A stretch of DNA of 63,475 bases, counting the filler, from Octopus bimaculoides (Eukaryota), in the NCBI RefSeq assembly GCF_001194135.2. It is 4 parts of 4 records of this genome, joined end to end, with 100 filler letters (N's around TTAATTAATTAA, not from the genome) between each part and the next. Parts side by side here need not be neighbours in the genome. Positions count along the whole stretch, not along the records: positions 50,149 to 63,475 come from NC_069008.1; 3 more parts are not named here. One strand, written 5' to 3'. The notes under the pieces are model-generated. The model made no database searches and was not told the DNA's origin. It was given only the letters and a program-made list of their open reading frames with translations. Positions within the stretch are counted from its first letter, which is position 1, and every line of letters begins with the position of its first letter. Both the position numbers and the translations under genes were made by a program. This document shows positions 10,671-63,475 of the stretch, piece after piece.

Positions 10671-10725
10671 GGATAAAGCTCAGTCCCCATTTGCACGCAA
10701 ATACAAAAATAAAAAAGTTCCCCTA

Positions 10726-10797
10726 TGGAGATGCCGGGGATCGAACCCGGGGCCTTTCACATGCAAAGCGAACGCTCTACCACTGAGCCACATCCCC
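10726..10797 (-). tRNA. tRNA-Ala(TGC), G9 variant
   Basis: Identical to 6882-6953; T6 terminator (A-run at 10711-10716). Confidence 0.95.
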
Positions 10798-11490: not shown

Positions 11491-11860
11491 AAAAGTTATG
11501 AGGGAAAAAAACGGAACTTTCCGACAGTCCTCTCCCCCACCTCCTCGGAAAACATTTTCCCCACAAACTTCTTTATAATCGTAGTCTATGCTGCTTGAAA
11601 GGTGTTTCTGTAAAATTTCATTAAAAGATATTCATTTTATTGAAAATTATGAGGGAAAAAAAACGGATCGTGGGAATTTTCCTAAATCCTCTCCCTGCCC
11701 CTTCGGAAAACATTTACCCCAGAAATTTCTTTATAATCGTAATATGTGCCATTTGAACGGTATTTCTATAAAATTTCATCAATATATATCCATTTTCCTG
11801 AAAGTTATGAGGGAAAAATCGGATCTTGTGAATTTTCCGAAAGTCCTGTCCTCCACCCCA
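11491..11860. repeat. Diverged tandem repeat, unit ~151-158 bp, ~2.4 copies
   Basis: ttatgaggga at 11496, 11647 and 11805; shared cggaaaacattt..ccc and ttctttataatcgta. Confidence 0.75.
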
Positions 11861-13418
11861 CCCCGCTAGTTTGCGCAAATTTTTGTTTTCATATTCGTTT
11901 TCTACAAATGTTTTTACACTTGTACAGTTTTTTTTGTTCTTGTTTTCGTAACCGGGGCTTAAACTGTATATTGAACCAAATTTCTACAATTAAAAATATT
12001 TGATATCGTCTTAAAAACCCTATATGCGCACATTTTCTTCTTTTGTGCGCGCGCACTAGCGCACTGCTTAGGGAGAACATTTTTCGTCAAGAAAAAGGTG
12101 TAAAGGTTACATCTTATATCATGCTATACTCACATTCTATAGAGAAAAACAAACAAAACAACCTCATACGACGCCCTATAATCTTAAAACAAGGACGAAG
12201 TAGGAAAACATTTATCATGGGTCAGCTCCTAGGGTACCATTAATGGAGCCCACTCTATTGCAAGCATTAAGGCAAAGTCTCCGGTTTCCCGTCCACCAGT
12301 CTCCGAAGCCCTGCAACGGGTTAAGTCACTGCCCTGAAAAAGAAATGGAGATCTGATGTGCAGCGGTTTCGTTTCGCTGACGCCCGAATTGCTGTTTGCC
12401 GCCTTCGACAACTTCCTTTGCTAAACAATAACACAATGTCCTGCGTACTTTTAAGTACGGGATGTTTTTCTTTTGTTTTAAATCTCGTTAATTGGTCGCA
12501 TTTTTGGTGGAATTATTTCAACTCGGGATTTATATCAACTATAAATGCTCTTACTGTTTTGTTAAAATTAAAATATAACAACTAAAATATACTTGAGATT
12601 CCTAACTAATTAAATGCGTCAGTGTCGCACTTTTCTAGTTTGTTTCCCATATGTTGAAAAAAGAATATCGCTTGTTATTTCGTTACCTGGAAGGGGGAAA
12701 TGTACTAAAGCTGAGGTTTATATATATAATCCTATTCCTTTAGAATATATTACTTTTTCATTTACCAAACATACGTTTTATTTTTAAAACATTTTCATAT
12801 ATAAAACATTCGAACGACAAAAGGAAAACAAAAAAAAAACTTGAAAACACTGTAAACTTTTAAGTTGCTAAAACATATTTTAGCCAATATAAAAGCGAAA
12901 TAATTTAAAGTTCCAGATTTTATATAAACTTCTTGTGTTGTGGATGTTGTTTCTTACACAAAGTTCGTTGTGTTAAACGTGGGAGATAAAAGTATTAAAG
13001 AAACTTAACAGAACACGAACTTTTTAAAGTGATAATTGCTTTTAACCTGCACTAAAACAATGCAGTTATAACATAAATATATATAAACTAGACAAGTCTA
13101 GTATTTACATTCAGTCGATTATGTTAAGATATCTATAGATAAATAGATAGGCATTGCAATAACGGAAAGCATTCTCTCACGCTATTTTCTTATCTGTCCG
13201 CTTTACTTATCGTGTGATCAAGTTCTAGTATCTCATTCCACCACTATATAAGGTGATCGGTGACTTTTAGCTACGCCCTGCCTTTAATCCTTAACGTTTG
13301 CTATGATTTTTATTTACATGTGCGTATATATCTATACATTATGCACACATTTACATATATATGTATATAAGGAAGCACCCATCTATCCATCTATCTATCA
13401 ACTAACCTACCTACCTAC

Positions 13419-13455
<37 letters not shown>

Positions 13456-14225
13456 TACGTACGTACATACATACAATTTTTTTTTATTATAGTATGTATT
13501 TTATCTGAAAAAAGGTTTACTTCAAATTATAATTAAAAATGGTATTCGTAGAAGAAAATTTGTGGTGATATATATAAATGAATTTTTTTAAATATAGATA
13601 TCTGTAATTTCTTTTCTAATTATTATTCTCTTTAATTGATTCTTTTCTTATTTTAAACGAATCTCGGCACAGTTATGGAATTACTGTCGCTATTTTATAG
13701 GGGAAGAAAAAGGCGAGGAATTCGGTGGGTTCTTTTTCCTTTGTTTTTTTTTTTTCTTTCAGTTTTCTTGTATTTAATGCAGTGGGAAATTCAGTTCTCA
13801 AAATAATTATACTGAATCAATGAATGAACGAGTAAGATCACATTGTGGCGCCAAAATTAACTTAACTTTGCCATATATTGTTGCCACCTTTTATTTTTAA
13901 TTGCATTTCATCGTGTTTTCATGATTCTAAATGTGTACACCTTGAAATTTTATAAACTGTTCTATTATAGTCAATATTTCTAAGTGCAAATAATAGGAAC
14001 ACAAAATATCGGAATCTCGCCAAGAGATAAACGAGAATAATACGCTGACGAATACACGTTAAAAGTTTATAAAGTCATATCTAAATCGAACACTTCGCTT
14101 TGCATTTGTTCTCATAAACTTCAGGTACTTTTAAAGTGCGTTATTTATACACATGATAAAAGAATTCTCATGAATTTTGCCATAAACCATTTCCGAAAGG
14201 AAGTCAAGATGGCTATAACGCTGGA

Positions 14226-14589
14226 TGACGTCATGGGGTATAATTAGCAGCATTAAATGATAGCAGGCACGTGCGCTGGGGTTCTGTGAAACTTTTCTGA
14301 CCCTACCTACCCGAACAGCTTGTCAACTTCTTATCAAACCGGGAGGTACTTTTATAACTGATGTTTATAGTCACAGGCCAACCCGGGTAGCGGTAGACGT
14401 GATTAAAAGCGTTCCATCCATGATCATCCCTTCTTATTTTCAGACAATTCGATTGCATCCTTTTCTCACTCAGATGGTAGGATGGAGTTTGAAGAGAATT
14501 TTGGTTGGTTTTTTTTTCTCGGAGATCGAGCGGCGAATTCGCAGGCTCTCCCATGTTGAGTCACTTTAAAAGGGAATTGTAGACACGTG
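14226..14589. promoter_or_regulatory. Candidate enhancer/promoter with CRE, E-box and AP-1 motifs
   Basis: TGACGTCA 14226-14233, CACGTG 14268-14273 and 14584-14589, TGAGTCA 14557-14563 in non-repetitive CpG-rich DNA; motif presence only. Confidence 0.3.
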
Positions 14590-16599
14590 GGATAGATTTC
14601 TATCGAATGACCTCACTATCCATCCCGTCAACGTCACAATCATATCGGCTACAAATGTTTGGCATATCCACTCTTACCGAGTAGTCTGATAAAACGCTTT
14701 CCCGTCGAGACCGTTCCGTCCTTTTTTCGCGCACAGTATAATGTAAGGCCGCATAAACCGATGCTTCTTTTCTTAAAAGTGTTTTGTGATATAAAATGAC
14801 ACATAGCAGCTATTTCTAGCAGACCGAAAGACCCTCATAAAGTCCTCACTTCGCTATGTCTTGATTAGTTTTATTTGACTTGTAGAACTGCGGAGATTCT
14901 CGAAAAAAGACCCTTGTTTTAAGATCTAATTATTATAATTATTTAAAAAAACCCAAAAAACTCTGACATTGCTGTTAAGGACTTGTAAAATATAAGAGAA
15001 ATTAAATTAACAGAGAACAAAAATACCGGCCGGCAGACTGGCTTGCCGGGAACTAATTTAGTAGTAACTTCAACATCACACATACACACTTTCACACCTA
15101 CACATACACGGCTTTTCACTCAGGATAGCTATACCACCACCACCACTGGCTATCTATTTATTATCTATCTATCATCTTTCTGTTTGTCTATATATATATG
15201 TGTCAATTGAAATTTTGAAGACTCGGTGTTTTGTGTTAGAAAGCAAAAAAAAAAAAGAAATGTAGGACAGATAGAAAGAGCAGACGAAATAAAACCGGGC
15301 GAATGAATGATGTGCAGTGAACCAGTTGTTTCTTTAAATCGGCTAAAGTTTATAGAAGGCGCGCGAACAACCACGTGTCGCGTTAAACACGGAAGGATGT
15401 ATCGAGGGAGGGGGAATAGGAGAAGGAGGAGGGAAAAAAATCAACCTTGATAAATGTTCTCGTGTTGAATAGTAGAAAACATTGTCACCTCGTGGAGGCT
15501 TAAAGTATATGCAACTTTGTTACATTTGCGTCCCGGTTTCAATTATCAAGTGAGACCAACCGAACTTACTGTAATTTTTAAAATATTTATCATAATAAAT
15601 TATGTTATATTATAGTTTTATATATATTATTATAGGTTATATATTAATATATAGATTATATATTATGAAATACAATAATGTAATATGGCGGACAAAGTTT
15701 AACTAAATGGGCAAAATTACGATTTGGTGATTTTGTCCCTGATTTTGTTTCCTCATAACTTTTTGGAAAATATAGTTTGTCTTTTTTTTAATGGAAATTT
15801 GTAGAAGTACAATTTTGAGGATGTAAATTATGATTATATTGCTAACATTAATTTTTCTTGTTTCGTTTTCTACATCATTCTCCCCGCCTCTCATATACGT
15901 CATTCTTTTAGACATTAATTTTCTCAACTGTCTAAAATGCATGTTTTTAAACCACATTTTACAGAAATACGTTTTCTAGTGTGTACATTACGTATTGTTG
16001 GTGTTTCAAATGTAAATCTAGTGGGCGGGGTGGGCAGAATTTTTTTTTTAATCTCAATTTACGAGAAAAAGGAATAACGATATCAGGGGTGAGGTGAAAA
16101 TAATCTCCAACTCTTCTTCCAAATGGGGAATAAAAAAAAAAAATTTAATCGACTTAATCGTAACTATAACGTTTTTCTGCAAAATTTTACTGAAATATGT
16201 GTTTTTTGGGAAAGTTATGAGACAACAAATTCAGGAGAGGCGAGGGACACCAAACTGTAGTTATCTAATGTTCAAACTGCATCGATTGAAAATGAGAGGT
16301 ACAGAAGTAATCGTCAATAATCGGCAAAATCGTCAGCGATCGATAATAAAGGCAATAATCGTAAAATACGCTTGAGTTATATTTGAACTTTTCCTTTTTT
16401 TTTTTCTTTCTTTCTGCCGGCAGACGATAGGAAGGGAAAGACCTGGAAATCAAGCGGACCACTCTTCCTCTCTTATACACACGCATAGTTGTTTTACAGA
16501 CAACACATAATTAATTACACATACAAAGAAGAGTAATTAGTATTTGTCTTTCACTTTTAATTGATACAGTTTGCTTCACTTTGTCCGCCATATTATCCT

Positions 16600-50148: not shown

Positions 50149-50521
50149 AAAGCACGTCCTCACACTCCTCAAGCTACGGTCCAAAAGTTGCAAAGCCTGA
50201 ATTATGAGATTTTGCAACATCCTCCCCATTTCCCTGATATCTCTCCGACTGATCATCACTTATTTAAGTATTTTGAGCTTTTCATAAGCAATAAAACATT
50301 CTTAAATAGAGAAGAGGTAATTGAACCATTCGGACAGTTTATCACAGCAAAAGATGAATTGTTTTTTTTAAAGATGGAATACATGACATAGAGAAACGTT
50401 GGGTAAACATCATAAATGAACATGGATCATACTTTGGTTCAATAAATCAGTTCTCTTCTAACACTTCTGAAACATTTTATTGTTACTTTTCAAATACGAC
50501 TTGTCATGTGAGACAACCTAA
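50149..50521 (+). mobile_element. mariner (DD34D) transposase 3' remnant with right TIR
   Basis: ARPHTPQATVQKLQSLNYEILQHPPHFPDISPTDHHLF; ends caacctaa followed by TA. Confidence 0.85.
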
Positions 50522-50972
50522 TAACTATGAGCATTTATTGAAGACAGGGTTAGTAGAAAGCGTAAGAACTACTACATGTAAGATACGTGTGCATGATTGA
50601 TCATTACAAACCAAAGTCACTACCTTTTTCCAACTCTGACGCAAGTATCTTTTATCTTTCATCTTTTACTTGTTTCAGTCATTAGAAAGTGGCCATGCTG
50701 GGTTATCGTCTTGAAGAATTTTTAGTCGAATGAATCAACCCAGTACTTTTTTGCTGAATAAAAGTAGAAGGGTGAGAAGTCATCTCACGGAGCAGAGCGA
50801 CATGGTCCCGTGTGGATTTCCGAATGACTTTGTTGGGTAACCTTAGTGCAATGGTTCAAAACTCGCTACAACACAAATAACTGTTTGTCTGCAACGCAGG
50901 TGATGTTGATTTAATTTCCAGGTAATACCAGTAACAATAACAACAACAAACTGCAATTCTTTATGAAAATAT

Positions 50973-51416
50973 TTATTTATCACCCATAATGAATGAAAGC
51001 AAAAGATTGGGATAATTCCAAAAACCACGAAAGAACTGTCTGACATCAAAACCGAGAACTTTGTAAACTTCCTTATCGTCACCACTGAGGAGTAAATAAG
51101 GCTCAATATCTCCAGGTTTTCGATGTTCATCATATCTAGGTATTTGGTAAATATTGTTGTATCTGTCTGTTATATAAACATATTCACCATGCGCAGTTAA
51201 GTGAGGTCTGTACTTAAAATAATATAAATGGGCTGAAAGTTTAATTTTCTTAACCAAATGTTCTCTGTACCAACAGACACAACAGTCAAAACCACGCCAC
51301 CACCGCTTACCCTCCCATTTCACAAAAACAACATCACCTCCAGAGGTTCCTACAATATCAAAAGACCCCAAAAACTCTATCCCCATCCCCCCACCTTTTC
51401 TACCGCCCAAGAACAC
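50973..51416 (-). CDS. Multi-beta-propeller protein, C-terminal segment (frameshifted)
   Basis: DIVGTSGGDVVFV, PHLTAHGEYVYITDRYNNIYQI blade-like strands; contiguous with the upstream ORFs. Confidence 0.55.
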   Translation of the reverse strand: MFLGGRKGGGMGIEFLGSFDIVGTSGGDVVFVKWEGKRWWRGFDCCVCWYREHLVKKIKLSAHLYYFKYRPHLTAHGEYVYITDRYNNIYQIPRYDEHRKPGDIEPYLLLSGDDKEVYKVLGFDVRQFFRGFWNYPNLLLSFIMGDK

Positions 51417-51478
51417 ACTTCACGATTGTATTTACATGTCCCACCATCGATATCAACTACATCTGTATAATTAAAGTA

Positions 51479-52810
51479 TCACCCATGTTTAGTTTTGACT
51501 CCAATATGTTGACCACCACCACATACAAGTTGATTGTCGTTGTTTTTATAAACCCTGTTGTAATATTTTTCAGTATTGATGGTTTTTAAATGAGAGAGAT
51601 CCCGTTTGAAGAACATCAGTTTTGTACCAACGACGATTATGAAACTTTCATCTGTCCACCGACATATATCTAGTGGTTGTTGTAGTAGTAGTTTATGTTG
51701 AAGTATACCACCTGTAGCTGTGGTGATCACTGTGACTGTGTCTCTAAACATAAACACACTGACATTGTCATCTAACTTAATTAGTTTGCTGCTGTAGTCT
51801 CTACTGTTATTGTCATCATAATTTACTGGTTCATCCCATGTAGGAATTGAAAGAGGAACCATCGCCATTCTATACGGCAGTTTCCTCACTGTTATTTCAT
51901 CAGTTCCTNNNNNNNNNNNNNNNNNNNNNNNNNNNNNNNNNNNNNNNNNNNNNNNNNNNNNNNNNNNNNNNNNNNNNNNNNNNNNNNNNNNNNNNNNNNN
52001 NNNNNNNNNNNNNNNNNNNNNNNNNNNNNNNNNNNNNNNNNNNNNNNNNNNNNNNNNNNNNNNNNNNNNNNNNNNNNNAACTATTTTACCTGATTTACTT
52101 CTTTCTCCTCCATCTTCTGCATTGTGTTTCAATTTAATTAATTCATTGCTGAATATTTCTTTGTTCGTTTGAGACGTAATGGAAGGGAAATGAAGGCGAG
52201 AATCAACTTTTAATAACGACATAGATTCAAGAACATTCAGCTGGTCACCATCAATCTTTATGCAATGGTATTCAGTCAAGTTAGTATGTACACACCAGTA
52301 AATGTTTCCCACTATTCTACATATTACACCGTAAGGCACTCGGCTTTGCCAAACTTTGTATTTCACTAAATCTTGTTTCTTCAGTTGAAATATTTCTCTT
52401 CTGTTAGGAATTGTGACCATTATATCTCTTTCTTTTGTAAAACACACACCACCAACTAAAGTTCCAAGATCTCTGTGACATATCAGCTCCCCGTCTCTAT
52501 CTAATATTTTAACATTGCCATTGTTAATTTTTTCACACACAACAGTGTGTCCCTCGTCAGAGATATCAACATCTTTTACTTGAACTGGACAGTCATCTGT
52601 TTGTAAACGAGAAACGGTGAATCTTTCCCGATTAATGATAAACAAACCTTCAACATATAATTTATTACTATCATTGTAGTTGCTGTAGTAACAGGTACTG
52701 CCAACAAACCTCGGTCCTTTACAGTTTATACAGGAGAAATATGAGATAGCTTTATAAATTCCATTATTTAAAAATATTCTGTTGTATTCCCCAGTTTGAG
52801 TCAAACACAC
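51479..52810 (-). CDS. Multi-beta-propeller (NHL-like) protein, segment 3
   Basis: 443-codon frame including an N gap; VKDVDISDEGHTVVCEKINNGNVKILDRDGELI, GGVCFTKERDIMVTIPNRREI, PLDICRWTDESFIIV. Confidence 0.75.
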   Translation of the reverse strand: MCLTQTGEYNRIFLNNGIYKAISYFSCINCKGPRFVGSTCYYSNYNDSNKLYVEGLFIINRERFTVSRLQTDDCPVQVKDVDISDEGHTVVCEKINNGNVKILDRDGELICHRDLGTLVGGVCFTKERDIMVTIPNRREIFQLKKQDLVKYKVWQSRVPYGVICRIVGNIYWCVHTNLTEYHCIKIDGDQLNVLESMSLLKVDSRLHFPSITSQTNKEIFSNELIKLKHNAEDGGERSKSGKIVXXXXXXXXXXXXXXXXXXXXXXXXXXXXXXXXXXXXXXXXXXXXXXXXXXXXXXXXXGTDEITVRKLPYRMAMVPLSIPTWDEPVNYDDNNSRDYSSKLIKLDDNVSVFMFRDTVTVITTATGGILQHKLLLQQPLDICRWTDESFIIVVGTKLMFFKRDLSHLKTINTEKYYNRVYKNNDNQLVCGGGQHIGVKTKHG

Positions 52811-52823
52811 AATATTATGATAT

Positions 52824-53318
52824 TCACTGTATTATGATATTCACAATATTATGATATTCCCAGTGATCCTGAAGGTACAAATAATTGTCATCAATTGCCA
52901 TCCAGTTACAATTTTGGCTTTCATACCACATGTAGTGTCTAACTGAATGTAAACATTCACCATTATAGTTGAAGAAAATGATAAATGTAATATTGTTAAC
53001 AATAATGGTATCATTAGCGGTCACTTTAATATTATAGATTTTATTAATAACATGTTTTTTGTCTTGTCTGTGCCTCGTTAATATCTCAGGTATGTCTATT
53101 TGTTTTATCACATTCGCCATCGAATGTATTTCATCAATATCAACGACATACAACGTATGGTTATCTCTAAGTGTACCACACACCAATAAATTATCTGACA
53201 AAGTAATACATTGATATTTATTTCCCGTCTGGTAAGTGATCAACGACAATGGAAATTCCAATTTTAAAGTCAACAGTCGATACTTATCAGAACCAGTGTG
53301 TTTGACTGCCATTGACAC
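52824..53318 (-). CDS. Multi-beta-propeller protein, segment 2
   Basis: 164-codon ORF; INKIYNIKVTANDTIIVNN..FFNYNGECLH; joins segment 3 in frame if 34 duplicated nt are removed. Confidence 0.7.
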   Translation of the reverse strand: MSMAVKHTGSDKYRLLTLKLEFPLSLITYQTGNKYQCITLSDNLLVCGTLRDNHTLYVVDIDEIHSMANVIKQIDIPEILTRHRQDKKHVINKIYNIKVTANDTIIVNNITFIIFFNYNGECLHSVRHYMWYESQNCNWMAIDDNYLYLQDHWEYHNIVNIIIQ

Positions 53319-54654
53319 ATATTGTAAATATCATTCTAATAGTACGAGGAACACCAAAGTAATCAATCAAAAATATGGTATTTGCACCAACCGAAATATG
53401 CTGACATTTCGTTCCAATTTCCCTCTGTGACACACCACCTGTACAGGAAATCCTATAAATAATATGTCCCTGGAGGACATAAAAATGGTTGTGGTACACG
53501 GTGATGTGCGTTGGGATGTCCAGCGAATTGGTGTATACCTCAAATAACTGCTGGCCACCCAGATTGTATGAAGTAACCCTATTAATATTGGCAAACGATA
53601 TTAAAATGTTGTTCTGCAGTCCTACAGCAATATCGGTAGGGACATCTTTTGCAATGAGCTGATTGGTTATTCTATCATCATCCCAGTCAGTGAGGTANNN
53701 NNNNNNNNNNNNNNNNNNNNNNNNNNNNNNNNNNNNNNNNNNNNNNNNNNNNNNNNNNNNNNNNNNNNNNNNNNNNNNNNNNNNNNNNNNNNNNNNNNNN
53801 NNNNNNNNNNNNNNNNNNNNNNNNNNNNNNNNNNNNNNNNNNNNNNNNNNNNNNNNNNNNNACGGGCTGATAATAAGAATGATTTGACGGAAAGGAAGGG
53901 TGGCTAGAACAGTTTCTTCACCGATTCTGGTGAAATCAGTGACAGAAGATGGACAATTGATATCATTTCTGTCACCATCTATTCCTACACAACATATTCT
54001 CTTGCCATGACGAGAATACGTTAGTATCCCACCTTGAATGACAACGATACTGGATATTAAATTACATGAGCTTTCATCAAATTGTTCGATGTCTGCTTGC
54101 TTGGACACAACCGGAGAAACAGGACGGAATGCGTTTTTAATTTTTGGTGCCTCAACGGTCTTGTGTTTATGTTGTAAAATATTCTTTTTTATATATTGTT
54201 CCAGAAACGTTTCAATTTTTCCAAAAGTAATAATATCTTGCCTGCAATCATATTTCTTAATGCTTTGCTGCAGAAATTCTAATCTCTGTGTAAAATCTAG
54301 CATAAAAATAGTTTTGTCCACTCCTACACTTTTTAGAAAAGTACATATTTTTTCCCGAGAATTTATCAACATATTAACTTTGTATTCATATGCATTGGCA
54401 CTTGTGTAACATATGCGTTTGTCTAAAAGATATCGTCTTCTCATTACTTTATGGTGTCTTTTGTCTCCATTTTGGTTTGTTGTTGACTGATATGAAAGTC
54501 CTTCTTGTGAAGTTTCTGTCCTCGAACTATCATCTCTCCAATCCCTGCACTTTCTATTGTAAACTCCTTCATCACATTTTGTTATCGAGTGACAGAAAGC
54601 TGTTTTCGGAGGCCTAAGTGTTGTCGTCACGTTATCTTCTGTATGGTCTTCCAT
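53287..54654 (-). CDS. Multi-beta-propeller (NHL-like) protein, N-terminal segment
   Basis: ATG at 54654 just after a splice acceptor; helical region, then PTDIAVGLQNNILISFANINRVTSYNLGGQQLF (NHL-blade pattern) and IPTHITVYHNHFYVL. Confidence 0.75.
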   Translation of the reverse strand: MEDHTEDNVTTTLRPPKTAFCHSITKCDEGVYNRKCRDWRDDSSRTETSQEGLSYQSTTNQNGDKRHHKVMRRRYLLDKRICYTSANAYEYKVNMLINSREKICTFLKSVGVDKTIFMLDFTQRLEFLQQSIKKYDCRQDIITFGKIETFLEQYIKKNILQHKHKTVEAPKIKNAFRPVSPVVSKQADIEQFDESSCNLISSIVVIQGGILTYSRHGKRICCVGIDGDRNDINCPSSVTDFTRIGEETVLATLPFRQIILIISPXXXXXXXXXXXXXXXXXXXXXXXXXXXXXXXXXXXXXXXXXXXXXXXXXXXXXXXYLTDWDDDRITNQLIAKDVPTDIAVGLQNNILISFANINRVTSYNLGGQQLFEVYTNSLDIPTHITVYHNHFYVLQGHIIYRISCTGGVSQREIGTKCQHISVGANTIFLIDYFGVPRTIRMIFTICVNGSQTHWF

Positions 54655-54661
54655 GATGAAT

Positions 54662-54690
54662 CTATAATAAAATATAAGGAAAACAATTAG
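54662..54690 (-). other. 3' splice acceptor with branch point, preceding the giant coding exon
   Basis: ctaat-tgttttccttatattttattatAG|attcatcATG. Confidence 0.6.
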
Positions 54691-55514
54691 CGTGTTGTGA
54701 AAATACATATTTTGAAGGAAATGATTTTTACTTCATAATTTAAATACAAAACCAAAACTTAATTGTATTTCTATCAGAGAATTGGGTTGTCAAATTAACA
54801 TCTAAACAATATTATGTTTGAATAATGATTAGAAATAAACACTTAATAACTATATATTGTATAAATAAATATATGACATGCTAATAAGTTTCATCAGTTT
54901 TGTGGTGTAAACGTATGAGCAATAAGTATGTACGTTGGAAATGATATTTGTGTCTAAATGTTAGAAAGTATCAGTGATATCTGATTTAGATGTATTTAAC
55001 AATAATTAGTTGAGAGATTCATCTCCTCCGAAATTACTTCTTATTATGAGACACTCTAGGCTGAAGAGAAAATTGGTATACATGGTATATATCACATTAC
55101 TAAAGTACACAACGAAAATGTTGAAAGTTCATCAACATGCAGCAATTAGCAAAATCTAGACGTTGTTCCATATCAGTTGTGGGATACAACTTGAACTGAA
55201 CATTTTGCTAGTTTTGCTAGCAAAATTTTGCAAGAATATAAGTACTACTAGCGATTATGTGTACTGAATATGATGTCAGTCATAGATGGCTTAGTTTCCA
55301 TCATATTTCTCTAGACTAGGAGATATCAATGAAGCTGTTGATAAAAACTGGAATTTTAACTGCTGTAAATTTCTCACTGTCTTTCCATGCCTGTATTTGT
55401 GTATTTATATACATACATGCACGCACGCACGCACGCACGCACACACACACGCACACACGCAAGTGCACACACGCACATGTACACATACATACATACATAT
55501 GTATACACACACAC

Positions 55515-55558
<44 letters not shown>

Positions 55559-55597
55559 TCCGAATTTGTGTGAATGTGTATGGAATAATATATCAGT

Positions 55598-57850
55598 AGA
55601 ATTAAGTTAAAACATGGTCTGGTTTTCACATTTCTTATTATGGTATTTTAACATTAAAGAAACATTTTGTGATTTTTTTAAAGTTCAATTAGCACTTTCA
55701 TACCTTCGTAGTAATCATCAGATTTCAAAATGAATTTAACTGGTAGATGAATTTCACAAAATGAATTTAAGTGTTCTTGACAACTGTAGTACCTTTTAGA
55801 ACGTTCCAACAAGCTGATTGTTTAGCATACAGTTTTGATCAATCCGCAAATAGCTTAAATGTCGGTTTGCCGGTCTACTGATAGTGTGTAATTTGTTTAT
55901 ATTCATATGTTAAAGATATTTTATATTCATATGTTAAAGTTATTTTTTAATCCACAACATTAACTGTTGTTATTACCGTGCAGAGCAGGTTTGAACATTT
56001 TAATAAACCGTTTTACTTTTATCTTTCTTGTAACCTCGCTTGTATCATGTAGTTTGTGGAAAGAAAAAAATTAGAAACATTTTCTGACCACATGTTTCTA
56101 TATGTTCATTCAATGGAATTTGACGAACATTAGTGTTCCGTATTTGTTGTCTGTCGATTCGTGAGCGTTCTAATAATGCATTCCCTTCTCGCCTATATAT
56201 ATAGTTCCTCACAATTTGGGCATTTAATGCAGTAGATCAAATTTCTACTTTTGCAGTTCATATCAGCATTTGCGAAAGTCGGTTCATTTTTTGTTCTAAT
56301 AGATCTACCAGTATGCATGTATTGACACGTTCCACATATACTACCATTACACTTGGATACTGTGGATATTTTATCCTGTTTGTTCATGTTGAATTTTGCC
56401 TTTATTAATAGTTTCTTTAGGTTATGCTTAACATAAGTGTTTGATTAGTTATTATTTCTAAAAGAATTTTTACTTTGTTTTATGATTGGCAAATTTCTTT
56501 TGATGATGTTAAAAATGTTTTGGAGATGTAGATTGTGTGTTACCAGAAATTCACAAGAGAAATGAGCAGCACACAATTACCATTTCTTGATAGAATGGTA
56601 ATTAAAAGCAACACCACAATCACAACTGATATTTATTACAAAAGTAGAAATACACACCAGTACCTAAATTTCAAATCATACCACCCAACACACACAAAAC
56701 ACAATATCCCATACTGTCTAGCCAGGAAAATTTGTGCAATAGGAAATGATCCAAATACCAGAAATAGACGACTTATTTCTTCTCAAGCAAAATTATCTTC
56801 TCTTACTAATAGAAAATAGCATGCAACAAGTAAAAGAGATACTTCTAGGACAACTTAGGGCAGCACAGAAAAGACGAACCCATCAATGGAACACAATATC
56901 ATTTCTAGAAACACACAATCGCACAATCTAGTTTTTAATTACCATTCTGTCAAGAAATGGTAATTGTATACTGCTCATTTCTCTTGTGAATTTCTGGTAA
57001 CACACAATCCGCATCACCAAAACAATTTTAGCATCATTAAAACAAATTTGTCAATTATAAAACATATTGAATGATTAAAAAACACAATAATTAATCCAAC
57101 ACTTATCTTAAGGAAAAGGTAACCATATAACCAAAAGAAACTATTAACAAAGGCAAAATTCAACATGAACAAACACGATAAAACATTTACAGTATTCACG
57201 TGTAATATGATAATAGATGTGGAACGTGTCAATATATGCATACTGGTAGATCCATTAGAACAGAAAATGGACAGATTTTCACAAATGCAACTATGAACTA
57301 CAAAAGCAGAAATTTGATCAACTACATTAAATACCCGAATTGCGAGGAACTATAATGTAGAATTGACAGGAAAATGCATTGAGCGAACATATAGTGGTCA
57401 GAAAATGTTTCTAATTTTTTCTTTCCACAAACTACATGACACGAGTTAAGTTGGAAGGAAGATAAAAGAAAAACGGTTTATTAGAATGTTCAAACCTGCT
57501 CTGAACGGAAATAACATCAATAATATAACAACTAGTTAATGATGTGGATTTAAAAATATCTTTAACATATGAATATAAACAAATTACAAAATATCAGTAG
57601 ACCCGGCAAACGCTTAAGCTATTTGCGGATTGGTCAAAACCGTATTCCAAAAATCCAGCTTGTTGGAACGTTCTAAGAGGTACTACAGTTGTCAAGAACT
57701 CAACTACAAGTTAAATGCATTTTGAAATCGGATGATTGCTACGAAGGTATGAAAGTGCTAATTGAACTTAATGAACATTACAAAATATATCTTAATGTTA
57801 AAATACCATAATAAAAAAAGTGAAAACCAGACCATGTTTTAACTTTATTC
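55598..57850. mobile_element. Penelope-like element fold-back: ~1-kb inverted arms around a ~320-bp loop
   Basis: 55598-56612 is the reverse complement of 56930-57850; arms carry GIY-YIG (CNGSICGTC...NCKSRNLIYCIKCPNC.ELYI) and RT thumb (KFTREMSSTQLPFLD..TDIYYK..THQYLNFKSYHP). Confidence 0.85.
55688..55724 (-). ncRNA. Degenerate minimal hammerhead-like motif (paralog at 57726-57763 on +)
   Basis: CTGATGA-TTAC..GTAT-GAAA-GTGC-TA; weak stems; the right copy has core CGGATGA. Confidence 0.3.
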
Positions 57851-57864
57851 AATTGATACTCTTT

Positions 57865-58336
57865 TTACTCTTTTACTCTTTTACTTGTTTCAGTCATTTG
57901 ACTGCGCCCATGCTGGAGCACCGCCTTTTAGTCGAGTAAATCGACTCCAGGACTTATTCTTTGTAAGCCTAGTACTTATTCTATCGGTCTCTTTTGCCGA
58001 ACCGCTAAGTTACGGGGACGTAAACACACCAGCATCGGTTGTCAAGCGATGTTGGGAGGACAAACCTACACACACACACACACACACANNNNNNNNNNNN
58101 NNNNNNNNNNNNNNNNNNNNNNNNNNNNNNNNNNNNNNNNNNNNNNNNNNNNNNNNNNNNNNNNNNNNNNNNNNNNNNNNNNNNNNNNNNNNNNNNNNNN
58201 NNNNNNNNNNNNNNNNNNNNNNNNNTTTAGTCGGCCCGAGGCTGTAGTAGAAGACACTTGCCCAAGGTGCCACGCAGTGGGACTGAACCCAGAACCATGT
58301 GGTTGGTAAGCAAGCTACTTACCACACAGCCACTCA
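57865..58336 (-). mobile_element. Full-length dimeric SINE (N gap in linker)
   Basis: Matches the consensus. Confidence 0.8.
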
Positions 58337-58645
58337 TATATATATATACATATATAATACAAAATGGGACAAGAACGCAAAAAATCCAGACAGTAAGGTG
58401 ATACAAAAAAGGGACAACAAAACATCCCGATAGACGATACAAAGAAAACAAGGACGGATCATTCGAAGTTTTCTTTCCTCAGTCGAGTTCCAGATTATCT
58501 TTGCATTATCTGGCCAACCCCAAGGAAAAACTAAGCTAAGAGCATTAGATTCCTTGGAAGAAAGCAGCGAATGTGTACGGAAACAAGGACGGAAAAAATG
58601 GAGAATGTTACACAAATACAAATAACATATATATATATACACATA

Positions 58646-60215
58646 CAGTATTTCTTACAGAAGTATGTGCACCCCTAAAAAATTTCAGTAAAATTGCCAT
58701 TACTCTGATAATATCGAAGAAAATCAAACGAAATTTATACTGAATAAAATATATTAGACATTCAAACATTATACAAATTTGGAACGCAAAACAAGAAACA
58801 TTTTCGAAGATATGGACGAAATATTAATTTTCAAACGTTACAAATATATGTACACCCGAAAGGGGATTTGCTTTGTTCAATATTTTATCCACTTTTTTTT
58901 TTTTTAGCTAAAATCAGATATTGCTGATAATTTCGATTCTAATAAATTATATCTTCTGGCATTTTTGCAGCGGTCATTATTATTGCTTTTTCAGGAATTC
59001 TGATATGTGTATCGTGGTGAAAATCTTCGTTGTGATTGAAATGGCACCAAAAGGGAAAGAATTGTCTGGAGATTTAAAGAAAATTATTTTTTATTTGCAC
59101 AAGAATAGCGTAAGATACAAGTTAATTAGCAAACGAATGCATATTAACGTCAATACAGTGGCCAGAGAAATTCAGAAGTACAAAACTACTGGACGGCTAA
59201 GCAATAGACATCATCCAGGTCGTCCTTCTATTTTAACTGTTCGTGATATTCGCCACATTCAACGTTGCGTGATGGACGACAGGTGTAGTACCGCTTCATC
59301 ATTGACTCAAGAAGTGTCTACTGTTAGTGGAAGGAGTGCATCTGCCCAAAGAGTTCATTGAAGATTGAACCAGTGTGGTCTTCATGGATGCATTCCTTAT
59401 GGGAAGCCTTTTCTCACTGCCAGGCATAAATCGAGTCGTCTTTCTTTTGCCGAAACCAATGTGAGTAAGGGGAAAAAGTTTCGGGATAAAATTAATTTTT
59501 CTGGTGAGATTAAAATCAATTTCGCTGGTCAGATAGTATTCAACGAGTATGAAGACGACCAAGTGAAGATAATAGCAACAAAGCACTGTGCCTGCCGTGA
59601 AGCACGGCGGCGGAAGTGTTATGCTTTGGGGATGCGAGAGTGCGGATCGTGTAGAAGAACTCACACTTAATGAGAGAACAATGGATTTAAGGCTTTATTG
59701 TGACATATTGCAGAAATCAATGTTGAAAAGCATCAAGGAATTAGGAAGACATTCCATGTTCCAACATGATAATGACACTAAACACACTTCAAAGATGACG
59801 ACTAAGTTTTTATTTCATAAAAAGATAAAGATATTGCCTTGGCCCACCATGTCACCTGATTTAAACCCAATAGAACATCTGTGGGGATTTTGAAAGGAAA
59901 GGTTGAGAAGAAAAAGATCCTGCAGTGAAACGGTTGAAAGATCACATTCAACATGAATGGAGATGCGGAAATTTAGTAAACTTTATGCTAAGAAGACTTG
60001 ATGCAGTTATTGAAAGCAAGGATGGTCACGCCAAATATTGAATATAGCAAATAATCCTTTAGGGTGTAAATATTTTTGTACCGTTTGAAAAATTAATATT
60101 TCGTTCATATCTTTGAAAACATTTATTGTTTTGTGTTCCAAATTTGTATAATATTTGCATGAATAATATGTTTTATTCAGTATAAATTTCGTTTGATTTC
60201 CTTCGATATTATTAG
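58646..60215 (+). mobile_element. Tc1-family DD34E transposon with long (~210-bp) IR/DR-type TIRs; transposase ~59041-60041 disrupted
   Basis: TA|CAGT start; MAPKGKELS...GRPSILT, KHGGGSVMLWGC, FQHDND..SPDLNPIEHLW (34 aa between D and E); left TIR matches the reverse complement of 60060-60215; first D replaced (NFSGE), with stops and frameshifts. Confidence 0.92.
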
Positions 60216-60815
60216 TATTGATTTGAATTCCAAAAGTTTATCAATGATCTCATTTCAAATGATAAAGCAGTCATCCAGATATTTTTTCCAGTTCTCACTA
60301 TATAATGGTGAAATGGATATCCATATTTTTGCAGTGACACTTCATACTTGGTGAATTCAAAATATCCCATTATTAGGTGCGCAAGAACAGGGGCTGCTTT
60401 CGCTCCCATCGCAGTTTCGCATTTTTAACGATAATAGATATCATCAGATTGGAAATAGTTGTTCTGAAGTATAAATTTTAATGATTCAGTAATAAAAACC
60501 TGGTTTATGTGTTCCGGAAGTTTTTCGGAGTACTTTTCTAGCCAAAATTTTATTGCTTCTATCCCATAGTCATGTGGGATATTAGTGTAAAAACAAATAA
60601 CATCGAAGGAAACCAATAATGCCCCTTCATTAGCTATTTTTGGTAGCTGCTTAAGCATATCTAGATCGTCTCTAACGAAACTTTTGACGTATTTCAGCAA
60701 GGGTTTCAGTAGGATGTCTAGAAAATTGCTAAGGTGGTGGGTTTCATAGGCTGCATCAGTTTCGAAAGAGATGATATAGATATGGGCTAGTTTCATTCGA
60801 GACGGTCTAGACATG
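60212..60815 (-). mobile_element. Penelope-like reverse transcriptase fragment
   Basis: LSNFLDILLKPL..SFVRD..LVSFDV..YTNIPH..ILQNNYF..TAMG...AP..A.LIMG; YLDD at 60281-60270 in a shifted frame. Confidence 0.9.
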
Positions 60816-61233
60816 GGCCAGTTTCATTAGAGACGATCAAAGGGCTCGAAGCAATATCACAGGGTTTTCTGGAAAAATTTTTTCTAAAATTTCAATTCTT
60901 TAAAAAAACAAAAAACAATCAACACCTCCGTCACCACCCCTCGCAAATTCACACCAATATTCTTCAAGTTTTTAAACTCGTTCGCTTATTGAGCATTCGT
61001 AGGTGATTTTCAACTAGCGCATAAAGTAGTTAAGCCCTGACAGAAATAACCAAGTCTCTTGATTTTTTTTTTTTTATTACACGCAAACAAAATTGAAAAC
61101 CGCGTTTGTGACAAGAATACATTCAATCGAAAACAAATACATATAATAAAGTAAAGTAGAATAAAACAACAGACCACAAAAGATTTTACAACCTAATGTG
61201 CATATTTTCTGAATTTTAACATAAAAGAGAAGG

Positions 61234-61365
<132 letters not shown>

Positions 61366-61643
61366 TATCACCATCAACACCGCCGTAACTATGACCAGTA
61401 ATAAAACCAGAATTACCATCTCCAAAGCAACAAACTCAACCTCATTCATCATTATCATCGTCATCATCAAAATTGATGCCAATTATTTTGTCAGAAACGG
61501 AATCTCTATTGTCGAAATCCCTAAAAAGTGGGTGGGGAAGAGGAGTTGGAGTGCTTGTTGTATATCTCCACCAAAAATATGACAGGATTTTGTCCACTTT
61601 CGCACTTTAACTTAGGAGGTTTTGTTCTGAGGGGTTTTATCCG

Positions 61644-61689
<46 letters not shown>

Positions 61690-61869
61690 TGGGGGTCCTA
61701 CACTCCGATAAAAGAGAAGCGAACTTAAATGGTGGATCGTACACCCTTTCACGTTGTAGTTTGATTAACACAGAATAAACGACAGTTCGACACTTTCTTG
61801 TTTGTGGTTATTTTTATGTATAGAGTTACAAACGCTATAACATAAGCGTAATTTAAAGTTGGTTATAAG

Positions 61870-62175
61870 GGTCGCTTTTATTAAATACGATCACAAATTA
61901 AGTAGGATATAAAGATCGACCTCATTATATACAATCACGAGTCGGTTATATAAATTGCCTCTTAAGTTGATTATAGGGATTGCCTTTTTTATGTACAATC
62001 ACGAGTTAAGTTTCGATATAAAGATTGCCTTTATTTTACACAATCAGAAATTAAGTTTGAATATAAAGAGTGCTTTTATTTTATACAATTAAAAATTAAG
62101 TTTGAATATAACAATTGCCTTTATTTTATATAATCAGAAGTTTGGATACAAAGATTACCTTTATTATATACATTT
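61870..62175. repeat. Diverged ~45-bp minisatellite
   Basis: tataaagattgcctttattttatacaatc..aattaagtttgaa recurs at 62017, 62062, 62107, 62147. Confidence 0.7.
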
Positions 62176-62193
62176 ACAACTGAAGATTGGATC

Positions 62194-62353
62194 GCAGGAG
62201 TGGCTGTGTGGTAAGTAGCTTGCTTACCAACCACATGGTTCTGGGTTCATTCCCACTGTGTGGTACCTTGGGCAAGTGTCTTCTACTATATCCTCGGGCC
62301 GACCAAACCCTTGTGAGTGGATTTGGTAGACGGAAACTGAAAGAAGCCTGTCG

Positions 62354-62422
<69 letters not shown>

Positions 62423-62632
62423 ATATGCTTGTGTGTCTGTGTTTGTCCCCCCCAACATCGCTCGACAACCGATGCTGGTGTGTTTACGTCCCCGTAACCT
62501 AGCGGTTCGGCAAAAGAGACCGATAGAATAAGTACTAGGCTTCCAAAGAATAAGTCCTGGGGTCGATTTGCTCGACTAAAGGCGGTGCTCCAGCATGGCC
62601 GCAGTCGAATGAGTGAAAAAAGTAAAAGAGTA
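62194..62632 (+). mobile_element. Full-length dimeric tRNA-derived SINE
   Basis: A-box-like tggctgtgtgg, B-box-like ggttcattccc, (TA)n linker, A-rich tail. Confidence 0.88.
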
Positions 62633-63387
62633 TATAAAGATAGGAACAGAGTTATTTCGTTTGGGGCGTTTACCGTCACGTTAAAAAGTGGTTTTAATAT
62701 ATTTTCAAGGATTCGTTAAAATCTATAAATCAAAATAATTATTGCATCAGTATTTACCTGTTTTAGTGATTGGGTTTCAGATTCCGGAATATCTTTAGAA
62801 ATCAGTTAGCTGAAATAGCGGTAAAAATGTGACTCCAGCAACGATGATATTTACAATATTAAGGAAGGAATGGCGTTACCTAGTTGAGTCTGTGTATGTT
62901 TGACTAAACGTCTGTAAGTCGTATGTATGTATGTATGTATGTTGTAGTGTTATCAATGTATGCAGCTGTTGCAATACGTAAGTGTGTGTATGTTGTAGTG
63001 CGTATGCATGTGTTTGTATATTGATGTGTATATGTATGTATTTGTACGTTGTAGTGTGTGTGTGTGTGTGTGTATGCATATATTAGCTCGCTTATATAGT
63101 TTAGTGATTTCAAATAACAAGACACTCTGTAAATAACAGATCTCAATCCCTCCACAAACTCACTTCTACATTCTCTCTCTCCCTCCCTCTCTCCCACCCA
63201 CTCTCCCTAGCTCCCGCCCTCCCTTCCTCTCGCTCCTCTCTCTCTTCCTCTTTCTTTCCCTCTCTCGCTCCTTATCAGTCTCTGTTGACGTCCTTTCCAG
63301 TATCGCTACCACTCTTTTTATTTTTCTCTTTTTTCACCCTTATTTCTTTTCATATATGAATCACATTAGCAATGATTAAATTCACAT

Positions 63388-63443
63388 CCATCCATCCATC
63401 CATCCATCCATCCATCCATCCATCCATCCATCCATCCATCCAT
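63388..63443. repeat. (CCAT)n microsatellite
   Basis: Seen directly. Confidence 0.95.
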
Positions 63444-63475
63444 ACATTATATAAGTACATATACATGCATATATA

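What the first reader, a model, noticed from the sequence alone, without database searches (positions are those of the whole stretch)
50973..54690. Giant single-exon gene for a ~1200-aa protein of three or more tandem NHL-like beta-propellers, no RING/B-box seen
Seen: four co-oriented, abutting ORFs over 3.7 kb form one coding unit. It starts right after a branch point and acceptor, so the 5' UTR exon lies upstream and the unit looks like a host gene rather than a TE. A helical N-terminal region is followed by repeated blade motifs (PTDIAV...NILIS...VTSYNLGG; VKDVDISDEG..VKILDRDG; GGVCFTKERDIMVT; PLDICRW; DIVGTSGGDVVFV). Established: molluscs have expanded TRIM/NHL propeller families, often tied to immunity, and NHL propellers can bind RNA. 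Inference: an orphan multi-propeller architecture, possibly a fast-evolving cephalopod sensor or scaffold family; I cannot assign a gene name.
Basis: partly seen in the sequence, partly recalled or inferred. Interest (0 to 1): 0.75.

Follow-up and report, generated by a model that had tools for sequence, protein, structure and literature searches.

The report
Decayed copy of octopus multi-propeller gene
The four abutting reading frames are the remains of one broken (pseudogene) copy of an uncharacterised, octopus-specific family of giant single-exon genes that encode about 1,800 residues of tandem NHL-like beta-propellers; the family is interesting, but this copy is dead.

Summary
On the minus strand, 54654 to 50980, four long ORFs form one coding unit, homologous (E down to 1e-133) to uncharacterised Octopus proteins.

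This copy is not an intact ~1,200-aa gene. Intact relatives are single ORFs of about 1,800 aa (O. sinensis 1,811 and 1,801 aa). Against them the window copy has:
- lost about 600-650 codons in uninterrupted sequence at 53332-53334;
- changed frame six times;
- gained a TGA nonsense codon at 51481-51479.

Both assembly gaps are colinear with the homologue and hide about 33 and 19 codons.

An exhaustive profile search of 1.84 billion proteins finds the family only in Octopus species and Argonauta. Most copies lie on one small chromosome, and many are broken.

Pfam finds nothing above threshold. Three results support NHL-like propellers without RING or B-box:
- AlphaFold models show an N-terminal helical region followed by all-beta domains;
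- Foldseek matches these to multi-propeller proteins;
- profile comparison links several domains to the propeller of molluscan TRIM-NHL proteins (hhalign 95%, E 5e-8).

The claim of an intact gene is not. Function is unknown; I infer a coiled-coil multi-propeller binding scaffold evolving by gene birth and death.

The parts
54655..55346 (-). Upstream region duplicated together with the gene. It ends in a putative branch point (gCTAATt), a polypyrimidine tract and a TAG acceptor (about 54661-54690), 7 nt before the ATG.
   Evidence: blastn homology to L001, L003 and L004 upstream regions. The aligned CTAA(T/A)..ttttccttatattt..YAG|attcaycATG is conserved in the window, L001, L003, L004 and L006. 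That it is spliced is inferred, not shown.
53863..54654 (-). Segment A1. Start codon at 54654-54652 (MEDHTEDN...), then a disordered basic N-terminus, a helical region and the beginning of beta domain 1. Matches P0049 aa 1-261.
   Evidence: tblastn 58.8% identity, E 4e-98. The AF2 model of P0049 has helices at 63-156.
53698..53861 (.). Assembly gap 1 (164 N), hiding about 33 codons (P0049 aa 262-294).
   Evidence: The flanks are colinear with the homologue. The frame across the gap is not testable.
53332..53697 (-). Segment A2: the rest of beta domain 1, with NHL-like blade motifs (PTDIAVG..NILISFANINRVTSYNLGGQQLFEV). Matches P0049 aa 295-415.
   Evidence: tblastn 59% identity, E 7e-45; 69% identity to P0008.
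53332..53334 (-). Junction of an internal deletion. P0049 aa 416-1015 (aa 373-1022 of the 1,811-aa ORF) are absent, about 1.8-1.95 kb. This removes beta domains 2 and 3, the Gly/Ser linker and the first part of domain 4. The junction is out of frame and lies in uninterrupted sequence, with no N run.
   Evidence: tblastn chains and the sequence read.
53291..53332 (-). Short segment J in a third frame (DIYNMCQWQSNTLV), matching P0049 aa 1016-1031. It ends in a frameshift at about 53291-53294.
52857..53294 (-). Segment B: beta domain 4 (..LLTLKLEFPLSLITYQT..). This domain aligns to the propeller of the Sepia TRIM-NHL protein P0083.
   Evidence: tblastn 52% identity to P0049 aa 1076-1230. hhalign of the family profile against P0083: 94.8%, E 5e-8.
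52808..52859 (-). 17-bp tandem repeat (GAATATCATAATAYWGT, 3.1 copies) inside the coding sequence. It causes the frame change between ORF B and ORF C.
   Evidence: Tandem Repeats Finder: period 17, 3.1 copies, score 90. Sequence. The homologue P0003 reads straight through this point.
52079..52831 (-). Segment C1: the end of domain 4 and domain 5. This is the best-conserved part of the family (VQVKDVDISDEG..NGNVKILDRDGELI..GGVCFTKERDIMVT).
   Evidence: 72.8% identity to P0049 aa 1223-1468.
51909..52078 (.). Assembly gap 2 (170 N), hiding about 19 codons (P0049 aa 1469-1487).
51482..51907 (-). Segment C2: the start of beta domain 6 (..PLDICRWTDESF..).
   Evidence: About 70% identity to P0049 aa 1488-1629.
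51479..51481 (-). Premature TGA stop codon at a position where homologues have Cys or another residue.
   Evidence: Sequence. The alignment continues in the same frame beyond the stop (YFNYTDVVDIDGGTCKYNREVC against P0049 YNYYVDIVDIDGGTCKYNCGVC).
51385..51400 (-). Frameshift within or next to a G-run (gtggggggatgggg) in a variable linker.
   Evidence: Frame change between tblastn HSPs 51907-51410 and 51359-51042. Sequence. A homopolymer of this kind could also be an assembly error.
51045..51389 (-). Segment D: beta domain 6 continued (DIVGTSGGDVVFVKW..YVYITDRYNNIYQIP..EVYKVLGFD).
   Evidence: 52-59% identity to P0049 and P0004.
50980..51046 (-). C-terminal tail with two more frameshifts (about 51042-51046 and about 51008-51010). 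It reads SDSSFVVFGIIP, then QSFAFIHYG, then the homologous stop TGA at 50982-50980.
   Evidence: Three-frame reading compared with P0049 ..SDNSFFIFGIIPGRQSFAFFHYDK.

Best explanation
The locus is a non-functional, decayed copy (unprocessed pseudogene) of an octopod-restricted gene family.

Intact members have one coding exon of about 5.4 kb, preceded by an intron that ends 7 nt before the ATG. They encode a protein of about 1,800 aa with no signal peptide. Its parts are a disordered basic N-terminus, a helical (coiled-coil-like) region of about 95 aa, and then roughly 25 four-stranded blades arranged as five or six beta-propeller-like domains. At least three of these domains are remote homologues of the NHL propeller of molluscan TRIM-NHL proteins. 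There is no RING and no B-box.

The window copy arose by DNA-level duplication, because about 700 bp of upstream sequence was copied with it. For most of its history it evolved under purifying selection (dN/dS 0.35). It was then inactivated by a deletion of about 1.9 kb that removed domains 2, 3 and part of 4, by a 17-bp tandem-repeat expansion, by other small indels and by a TGA nonsense mutation.

Inferred and not shown: intact family members act as cytosolic multivalent binding scaffolds, with propeller faces binding protein or RNA ligands and the helical region mediating oligomerisation. The family evolves by gene birth and death, as recognition families often do.
For: One unit, and homology:
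- Octopus proteins span the ORF junctions.
- An intact 1,811-aa ORF is present in O. sinensis locus L001.
- The P0049 and P0062 genes are single coding exons.

Lesions:
- tblastn chains against the 1,811-aa ORF and against P0049 show six frame changes, the missing aa 416-1015 and an in-frame TGA (with sequence).
- The 17-bp, 3.1-copy repeat sits at the B/C junction.

Selection and turnover:
- dN/dS is 0.35 for the window against P0049, and 0.50 between two intact paralogues.
- Other copies are also broken: L002 and L004 have one frameshift each, and L003 and L005 have several.

Distribution:
- 41 clusters were found with the intact ORF as query.
- The exhaustive profile search gave only 32 hits among 1.84 billion representatives, and all strong ones are Octopus or Argonauta.

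Fold:
- AF2 models show helices at 63-156, then all-beta structure.
- Foldseek probability is 1.0 to IFT-A, Utp21, DDB1 and LRP4 multi-propellers.
- One domain matches an NHL-repeat protein with TM 0.68.

NHL link:
- hmmsearch hit to the Sepia pharaonis RING+B-box+NHL protein P0083, E 4.5e-7.
- hhalign 94.8%, E 5e-8 over 213 columns.
- Domains d3, d4b and d5 score 75-95% against P0083, P0085, P0086 and P0087.

Upstream: the acceptor-like sequence is conserved among paralogues, and upstream homology extends about 700 bp.
Against: - The window comes from a gapped draft assembly. Single indels, especially in the G-run near 51390 and in the 17-bp repeat, could be assembly errors.
- Frames across the two N runs are unknowable.
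- No transcript data were available, so residual expression or a truncated product cannot be excluded.
- Model confidence is only moderate (mean pLDDT 61-64).
- Pfam NHL is not met at threshold.
- The functional mechanism has no direct evidence.
Confidence: 0.85

Rival explanations
1. An intact, functional gene whose apparent frameshifts are assembly or sequencing errors. On this reading it would be a shorter (~1,150-1,200 aa) family member lacking domains 2 and 3.
For: The assembly is a gapped draft, with three N runs in 13 kb. One shift lies in a G homopolymer and one in a tandem repeat. dN/dS of 0.35 shows a long history of constraint. Open frames are still long.
Against: Eight independent lesions would all need to be artefacts. 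They include a TGA substitution, an out-of-frame deletion junction in clean sequence and two shifts in ordinary sequence near the 3' end. No intact family member with this shortened architecture was seen among about 60 retrieved proteins. Database gene callers could only produce fragments of 162 and 137 aa from it.
Confidence: 0.07
2. A transposable-element or virus-derived ORF that has multiplied in octopus genomes.
For: There are many copies and many of them are broken. TE remnants surround the locus. Some gene models fuse family sequence to DUF4371 or zinc-finger domains.
Against: No RT, integrase, transposase or capsid domain occurs in any of 16 full-length members. The exhaustive search finds no TE or viral relatives, and viral fold hits are only generic propellers. 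Most copies lie on one chromosome rather than being dispersed. Some members have 1:1:1 orthologues at 90% identity or more across three species. Paralogues share an intron acceptor and upstream region, not terminal repeats.
Confidence: 0.04
3. Four separate small genes, as database gene calls suggest.
For: Two of the ORFs (162 aa and 137 aa) exist as predicted proteins in UniRef/MetaClust.
Against: All four ORFs are consecutive, colinear parts of one 1,800-aa homologue. Their 'starts' are internal residues of that protein, and the ORFs overlap or abut at frameshift points.
Confidence: 0.03

Closest known systems
TRIM-NHL proteins (TRIM2, TRIM3, TRIM32, TRIM71/LIN-41, Brat, Thin, and the molluscan TRIM-NHL expansions). 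The closest sequence found is Acanthosepion (Sepia) pharaonis CAE1315789.1 (P0083).
   Same: At least three beta domains of the family are remote homologues of the C-terminal propeller of P0083 (hhalign 94.8%, E 5e-8). P0083 itself passes Pfam's RING, B-box and NHL thresholds. The blade motif P-x-D-I-A-V..(N/D)-x-(I/L)-(I/L/V)..N-x-(R/V)-(I/V)..(F/Y)..DG resembles the NHL repeat, which I read directly from the sequence. A helical region precedes the propellers, as the coiled coil does in TRIMs.
   Different: There is no RING and no B-box, so no E3 ligase module. The family has five or six tandem beta domains instead of one six-bladed propeller. The Pfam NHL model is not met at threshold. The protein is about 1,800 aa rather than 650-900 aa. 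The helical region shows no detectable similarity to the TRIM coiled coil.
Multi-propeller scaffolds (DDB1/CPSF160/SF3B3 three-propeller proteins, IFT-A WD40 tandems, Utp21/Pwp2, LRP4 YWTD arrays)
   Same: These are the best Foldseek matches over 640-980 aligned columns, with probability 1.0 and E 1e-22 to 1e-11. The general architecture, several propellers on one chain with no catalytic domain, suggests a binding platform.
   Different: Sequence identity is 7-12%. TM-scores are 0.1-0.25 because domain arrangements differ. There is no WD40 or YWTD Pfam signal above threshold. The similarity is of fold class and is not evidence of common descent.
Unprocessed pseudogenes in birth-and-death gene families (for example olfactory-receptor or immune-receptor clusters)
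   Same: The copy was duplicated at DNA level with its upstream region. It carries multiple disabling lesions. Many sister copies in the same chromosome-wide cluster are also broken, and dN/dS among intact copies is intermediate (0.5).
   Different: The function of the parent family is unknown. No direct evidence links it to immunity or sensing.

Membership tests
NHL-repeat six-bladed beta-propeller (Pfam PF01436) | Matches the Pfam NHL repeat model at or above the gathering score | tested here: not met
   There are no Pfam hits for the six window segments. Among 16 full-length members, NHL appears once at E 3.4. The divergent member P0067 reaches E 0.002 and 18.5 bits against a cut-off of 20.
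NHL-repeat six-bladed beta-propeller (Pfam PF01436) | Detectable homology to a bona fide NHL propeller | tested here: met
   Family profile against P0083, whose propeller passes the Pfam NHL threshold at 29.1 bits: hmmsearch E 4.5e-7 in a library of 1.84 billion proteins, and hhalign 94.8%, E 5e-8 over 213 columns. Three family domains score 75-95% against P0083, P0085, P0086 and P0087.
NHL-repeat six-bladed beta-propeller (Pfam PF01436) | Closed propeller of six four-stranded blades of about 40-45 aa | tested here: inconclusive
   AF2 models are all-beta with about 100 short strands. Foldseek probability is 1.0 to propeller proteins. One domain superposes on a 262-aa NHL-repeat protein with TM 0.68. 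Strand counts give about 4-7 blades per domain.
TRIM (tripartite motif) proteins | N-terminal RING finger | tested here: not met
   No RING model matches the window segments or the 16 full-length members. The conserved N-terminus begins MED... and has no Cys/His pattern.
TRIM (tripartite motif) proteins | B-box zinc finger | tested here: not met
   No B-box match.
TRIM (tripartite motif) proteins | Coiled-coil following the B-box | tested here: inconclusive
   Helices are predicted at P0049 63-156, but with pLDDT of only about 50-65. There is no profile similarity to the coiled-coil region of P0083.
Pseudogene (unprocessed) | Homology to an intact protein-coding gene, plus disabling lesions (frameshifts, nonsense, truncating deletion) | tested here: met
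   Intact ORFs of 1,811 and 1,801 aa exist elsewhere. The window has six frame changes, one TGA and a deletion of about 600-650 codons. The upstream region was co-duplicated, and I saw no poly(A) tail or sign of retroposition in the sequence read.
Pseudogene (unprocessed) | Lack of a functional transcript or protein | not testable with these tools
   No RNA-seq or proteome data are accessible here.
Transposable element | Encodes or accompanies a transposition enzyme, has defined termini, and is dispersed across chromosomes | tested here: not met
   No TE domains in the family. Copies are concentrated on one chromosome per species. Conserved orthologues exist. Shared flanks are an upstream intron end, not terminal repeats.

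The most novel reading that the evidence does not exclude
The parent family is an undescribed, Octopoda-specific invention. A TRIM-NHL-type propeller was multiplied five- to six-fold on one chain and lost its RING and B-box. It then amplified to dozens of giant single-exon genes spread along one small chromosome, with rapid birth and death. On this reading the intact members form a diversified intracellular recognition system, binding viral or TE RNA or protein, that is unique to octopods. The window locus would be one fossil of that turnover.
Probability: 0.2. Interest if true: 0.7.

Novelty: new variant of a known kind. Interest (0 to 1): 0.4.

Why it matters
For the window itself, the result is a correction. 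The 'giant gene' is a pseudogene, and two of its fragments sit in protein databases as predicted small proteins.

The parent family is more interesting. It is a lineage-restricted protein of about 1,800 aa and five or six propellers, with no Pfam domain and no literature I could find. There are at least 41 sequence clusters in three Octopus species, plus Argonauta. Copies are concentrated on one small chromosome and evolve fairly fast (dN/dS about 0.5).

Cephalopod genome papers have stressed the protocadherin, C2H2-ZNF and GPCR expansions. This family would add a candidate recognition or scaffold family derived from TRIM-NHL propellers. It could be tested with existing octopus RNA-seq and single-cell atlases.

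Tried and rejected
- Pfam scans of the window segments and of 16 full-length homologues gave nothing above threshold. The most frequent sub-threshold hit was DUF4934, in 9 of 16 members with best E 0.0077.
- A profile search of PDB sequences gave nothing significant. The best E was 0.018, to a PQQ-like designed propeller, and TRIM71, Thin and TRIM3 NHL domains appeared only at E of about 1.
- BLASTP between the window segments showed no significant internal repeats. A profile self-comparison of the family gave only weak signals, with best E 1.6e-6 at 80% probability.
- A fragment-rich family alignment (A2) was unusable as a profile. I used the single intact ORF and later trimmed alignments instead.
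- Looking up window ORF B in the contig index to extend the flank found no record.
- Rfam and tRNA scans of the piece found nothing.
- Three literature searches for octopus, propeller, NHL or TRIM expansions found nothing on this family.
- I considered whether the chromosome rich in this family might be the octopus sex chromosome. I had no data to test this and dropped it.
- The MIB2-like and Ank-RING hit (P0080) looks like a chimeric gene model next to a broken family copy on the contig of L005, not an ancestral RING link. That is an inference.


Full report
**1. What is in the sequence**

The piece 50149-63475 is AT-rich, with G+C of about 0.24-0.44. It contains three N runs: 51909-52078, 53698-53861 and 58089-58225.

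On the minus strand, four long ORFs follow each other in three different frames: 54732-53290, 53330-52827, 52831-51482 and 51419-50976. Pfam finds nothing in any segment, and BLASTP between segments shows no significant internal repeat.

**2. One coding unit, with relatives only in octopods**

Segment C1 matches 'hypothetical' or 'uncharacterized' proteins of Octopus vulgaris and O. bimaculoides (E 2e-75). The N-terminal half matches O. sinensis, O. vulgaris and O. bimaculoides proteins (E 1e-133).

- The O. vulgaris protein P0004 runs without interruption across C1, gap 2, C2, the stop codon and ORF D.
- P0018, P0016 and P0008 continue for about 500-600 residues after the point where window ORF A ends.
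- The O. sinensis locus of P0018 (L001) holds an intact single ORF of 1,811 aa.
- The closest full-length relative, P0049 (XP_036370931.1, 1,801 aa, 59-73% identity), is a single coding exon of 5,406 nt. So is the conserved member P0062, at 5,025 nt.

**3. Lesions in the window copy**

I chained tblastn matches of the 1,811-aa ORF and of P0049 onto the window and read the junctions directly. The chain, in P0049 numbering, is:

| Window (minus strand) | P0049 residues | Note |
|---|---|---|
| 54654-53863 | 1-261 | segment A1 |
| 53698-53861 | about 262-294 | gap 1, about 33 codons hidden |
| 53697-53335 | 295-415 | segment A2 |
| 53332-53334 | 416-1015 absent | out-of-frame junction in clean sequence |
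| 53332-53291 | 1016-1031 | third frame, then a shift at about 53291-53294 |
| 53294-52842 | 1076-1230 | segment B |
| 52808-52859 | – | 17-bp, 3.1-copy tandem repeat changes the frame |
| 52831-52082 | 1223-1468 | segment C1 |
| 51909-52078 | 1469-1487 | gap 2, 19 codons hidden |
| 51907-51410 | 1488-1655 | contains TGA at 51481-51479 |
| about 51385-51400 | – | shift in a G-run |
| 51359-51042 | 1670-1777 | segment D |
| about 51042-51046 and 51008-51010 | – | two more shifts |
| 50982-50980 | – | homologous TGA stop |

The absent stretch corresponds to aa 373-1022 of the 1,811-aa ORF, which is about 1.8-1.95 kb.

Both gaps are colinear with the homologue, so their two sides belong together. 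Whether the frame is kept across them cannot be known. In total there are six frame changes, one nonsense codon and one large deletion, which I read as a pseudogene.

dN/dS against P0049 is 0.35 (dS 0.62). Between two intact O. sinensis paralogues it is 0.50. This fits a copy that was constrained for most of its history and was inactivated fairly recently.

Two of the ORFs (162 and 137 aa) exist as predicted proteins in UniRef/MetaClust. Other entries held only in UniRef/MetaClust are O. bimaculoides proteins. The window is therefore probably from O. bimaculoides, which is an inference.

**4. The family**

With the intact ORF as query, 41 clusters at 90% identity were found, all from O. vulgaris, O. 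sinensis or O. bimaculoides. Many are 1,780-1,900 aa long.

- Most lie on one small chromosome per species: a 29.2-Mb O. vulgaris record, a 15.1-Mb O. sinensis record and an 18.6-Mb O. bimaculoides record. A minority lie elsewhere.
- On the O. sinensis chromosome, copies sit at 4.4, 9.8 and 13.3 Mb. The family is therefore spread along the chromosome and is not one tight array.
- Of the seven loci fetched, three are intact (L001, L006, L007). Two have one frameshift (L002, L004) and two have several lesions (L003, L005).

An exhaustive HMMER profile search of 1.84 billion representative proteins returned only 32 hits at E up to 0.001. The strong hits are Octopus species plus Argonauta hians, with proteins of 1,913 and 1,925 aa. 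Two subfamilies have members from all three Octopus species within one 90%-identity cluster, so they are conserved orthologues.

DNA homology between copies starts about 700 bp upstream of the ATG and ends about 20-60 bp after the stop. The upstream stretch ends in a conserved CTAA(T/A), a polypyrimidine tract and a YAG, 7 nt before the ATG, in the window and four other loci.

**5. Fold**

I modelled P0049 in two halves with AlphaFold2, using family alignments.

- *N-half (1-870).* Mean pLDDT is 63.6. Residues 1-62 are disordered, 63-156 are helical and 157-200 form a linker. All-beta structure follows from 201 to 858, at pLDDT of about 70-86, with breaks near 423-436 and 681-695.
- *C-half (861-1801).* Mean pLDDT is 60.7 and pTM is 0.61. 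It is all-beta. Residues of about 1500-1801 are very confident (80-95) and 960-1280 moderately so. Residues 1282-1393 and the Gly/Arg/Glu-rich linkers are poor.

Strand lists give about 100 short strands, which corresponds to roughly 25 blades in five or six domains. That count is inferred, because I had no coordinates.

Foldseek against the PDB gives probability 1.0 and E of 1e-22 to 1e-11. The matches are tandem or triple propeller proteins: IFT-A, Utp21, DDB1, LRP4 and EML-like proteins. Against viral models there are only generic propellers. One of them is an NHL-repeat protein that superposes on one domain with TM 0.68 when normalised by the target.

**6. Relation to NHL and TRIM**

Pfam NHL is not reached, and the PDB sequence profile search is not significant.

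The weak tail of the exhaustive search does point to TRIM-NHL proteins:

- It is led by a Sepia pharaonis protein (P0083) with RING, B-box and NHL domains, at E 4.5e-7.
- Next come a mussel RING/B-box protein and an NHL-repeat protein.
- hhalign of the family profile against P0083 gives 94.8%, E 5e-8 and 26% identity over 213 columns of its propeller.
- Family domains d3, d4b and d5 each score 75-95% against P0083, P0085, P0086 or P0087.

The N-terminal helical region shows no similarity to the TRIM coiled coil. The propellers are thus best described as divergent, NHL-related and multiplied on one chain, without the E3 module.

**7. What the window retains**

Mapped on P0049, the window keeps the following:
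- the N-terminus and helical region;
- 82% of domain 1, the remainder lying in gap 1;
- none of domains 2 and 3 or the linker;
- 68% of domain 4;
- all of domain 5;
- 90% of domain 6.

'Three or more propellers' is a fair count of the remains. The intact architecture is larger.

**8. Mechanism**

Shown:
- pseudogene status;
- family architecture at the level of fold class;
- restriction to octopods;
- expansion and frequent decay of copies;
- moderate constraint.

Inferred:
- Intact members are cytosolic, since there is no signal peptide or hydrophobic N-terminus in the sequences.
- They act as multivalent scaffolds whose propeller faces bind ligands, with the helical region mediating oligomerisation.
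- The birth-and-death pattern suggests a recognition role.

None of these inferred points has been tested.

**9. Rivals**

- *Assembly-error artefact, about 0.07.* Too many independent lesions lie in ordinary sequence.
- *TE or virus, about 0.04.* There are no TE domains, copies are confined mainly to one chromosome, orthologues are conserved, and the shared flank is an intron end.
- *Four separate genes, about 0.03.* The ORFs are colinear with one protein.

**10. Verdict**

The locus itself is an ordinary pseudogene. The parent family is an undescribed variant of NHL-type propeller proteins and deserves a look by cephalopod genomicists.

Noticed in passing
window 58921-59893 (+): Frameshifted remnant of a Tc1/mariner transposase. 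Three ORFs hit HTH_SB (E 4e-10), HTH_Tnp_Tc3_2 and DDE_3 (E 2e-7).
   Followed up: partly
window 50648-50755, 57855-58359 (spanning the N run 58089-58225), 62190-62642: Copies of a short interspersed repeat that also occurs many times in every Octopus locus fetched (8, 31 and 31 blastn hits). It is probably an octopus SINE-like element. ARAGORN finds no tRNA-like part.
   Followed up: partly
window 60425-60814 (-) and 56535-56819 (+): ORFs whose translations look like fragments of a retroelement polymerase (..LVSFDVICFYTNIPHDYG....YLNFKSYHPTHTKHNIPYCLARKI..). They gave no Pfam hit at E up to 0.01.
   Followed up: partly
window 61234-61376; 61962-62179; 55415-55557: A (CAT)n microsatellite of 48 copies that reads as poly-Met/His ORFs, a 45-bp, 5-copy minisatellite, and complex (CA/CACG)n repeats.
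   Followed up: no
window 52827-53318 and 50976-51389 (minus-strand ORFs B and D): These two pseudogene fragments are present in UniRef/MetaClust as stand-alone predicted proteins of 162 and 137 aa. They are database entries that are really pieces of a broken gene.
   Followed up: yes
L006 1-18460 (-) versus 10001-15406 (+): The intact O. sinensis paralogue P0049 lies entirely inside the span of a larger gene on the opposite strand (1,956-aa product). It is presumably nested in an intron of that gene.
   Followed up: no
O. vulgaris OX597841.1 (29.2 Mb), O. sinensis CM016888.1 (15.1 Mb), O. bimaculoides CM046628.1 (18.6 Mb): Most family members in each species sit on one small chromosome, spread over many megabases. 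O. vulgaris accessions CAI9742749 to CAI9743143 include at least a dozen family-derived gene models. Why this chromosome accumulates them is unexplained.
   Followed up: partly
P0023, P0029, P0080 (gene models in O. vulgaris): Some annotated proteins fuse family sequence with C2H2 zinc fingers, DUF4371 or an Ank-RING MIB2-like part. They are probably chimeric gene models that include neighbouring genes or TE fragments.
   Followed up: no
P0049 aa 1032-1075 (L006): A 44-residue Asp-rich insertion (DDDVDDDDNDDDSGDD...) sits inside beta domain 4 of the closest homologue. It is absent from the window copy and from most family members.
   Followed up: no
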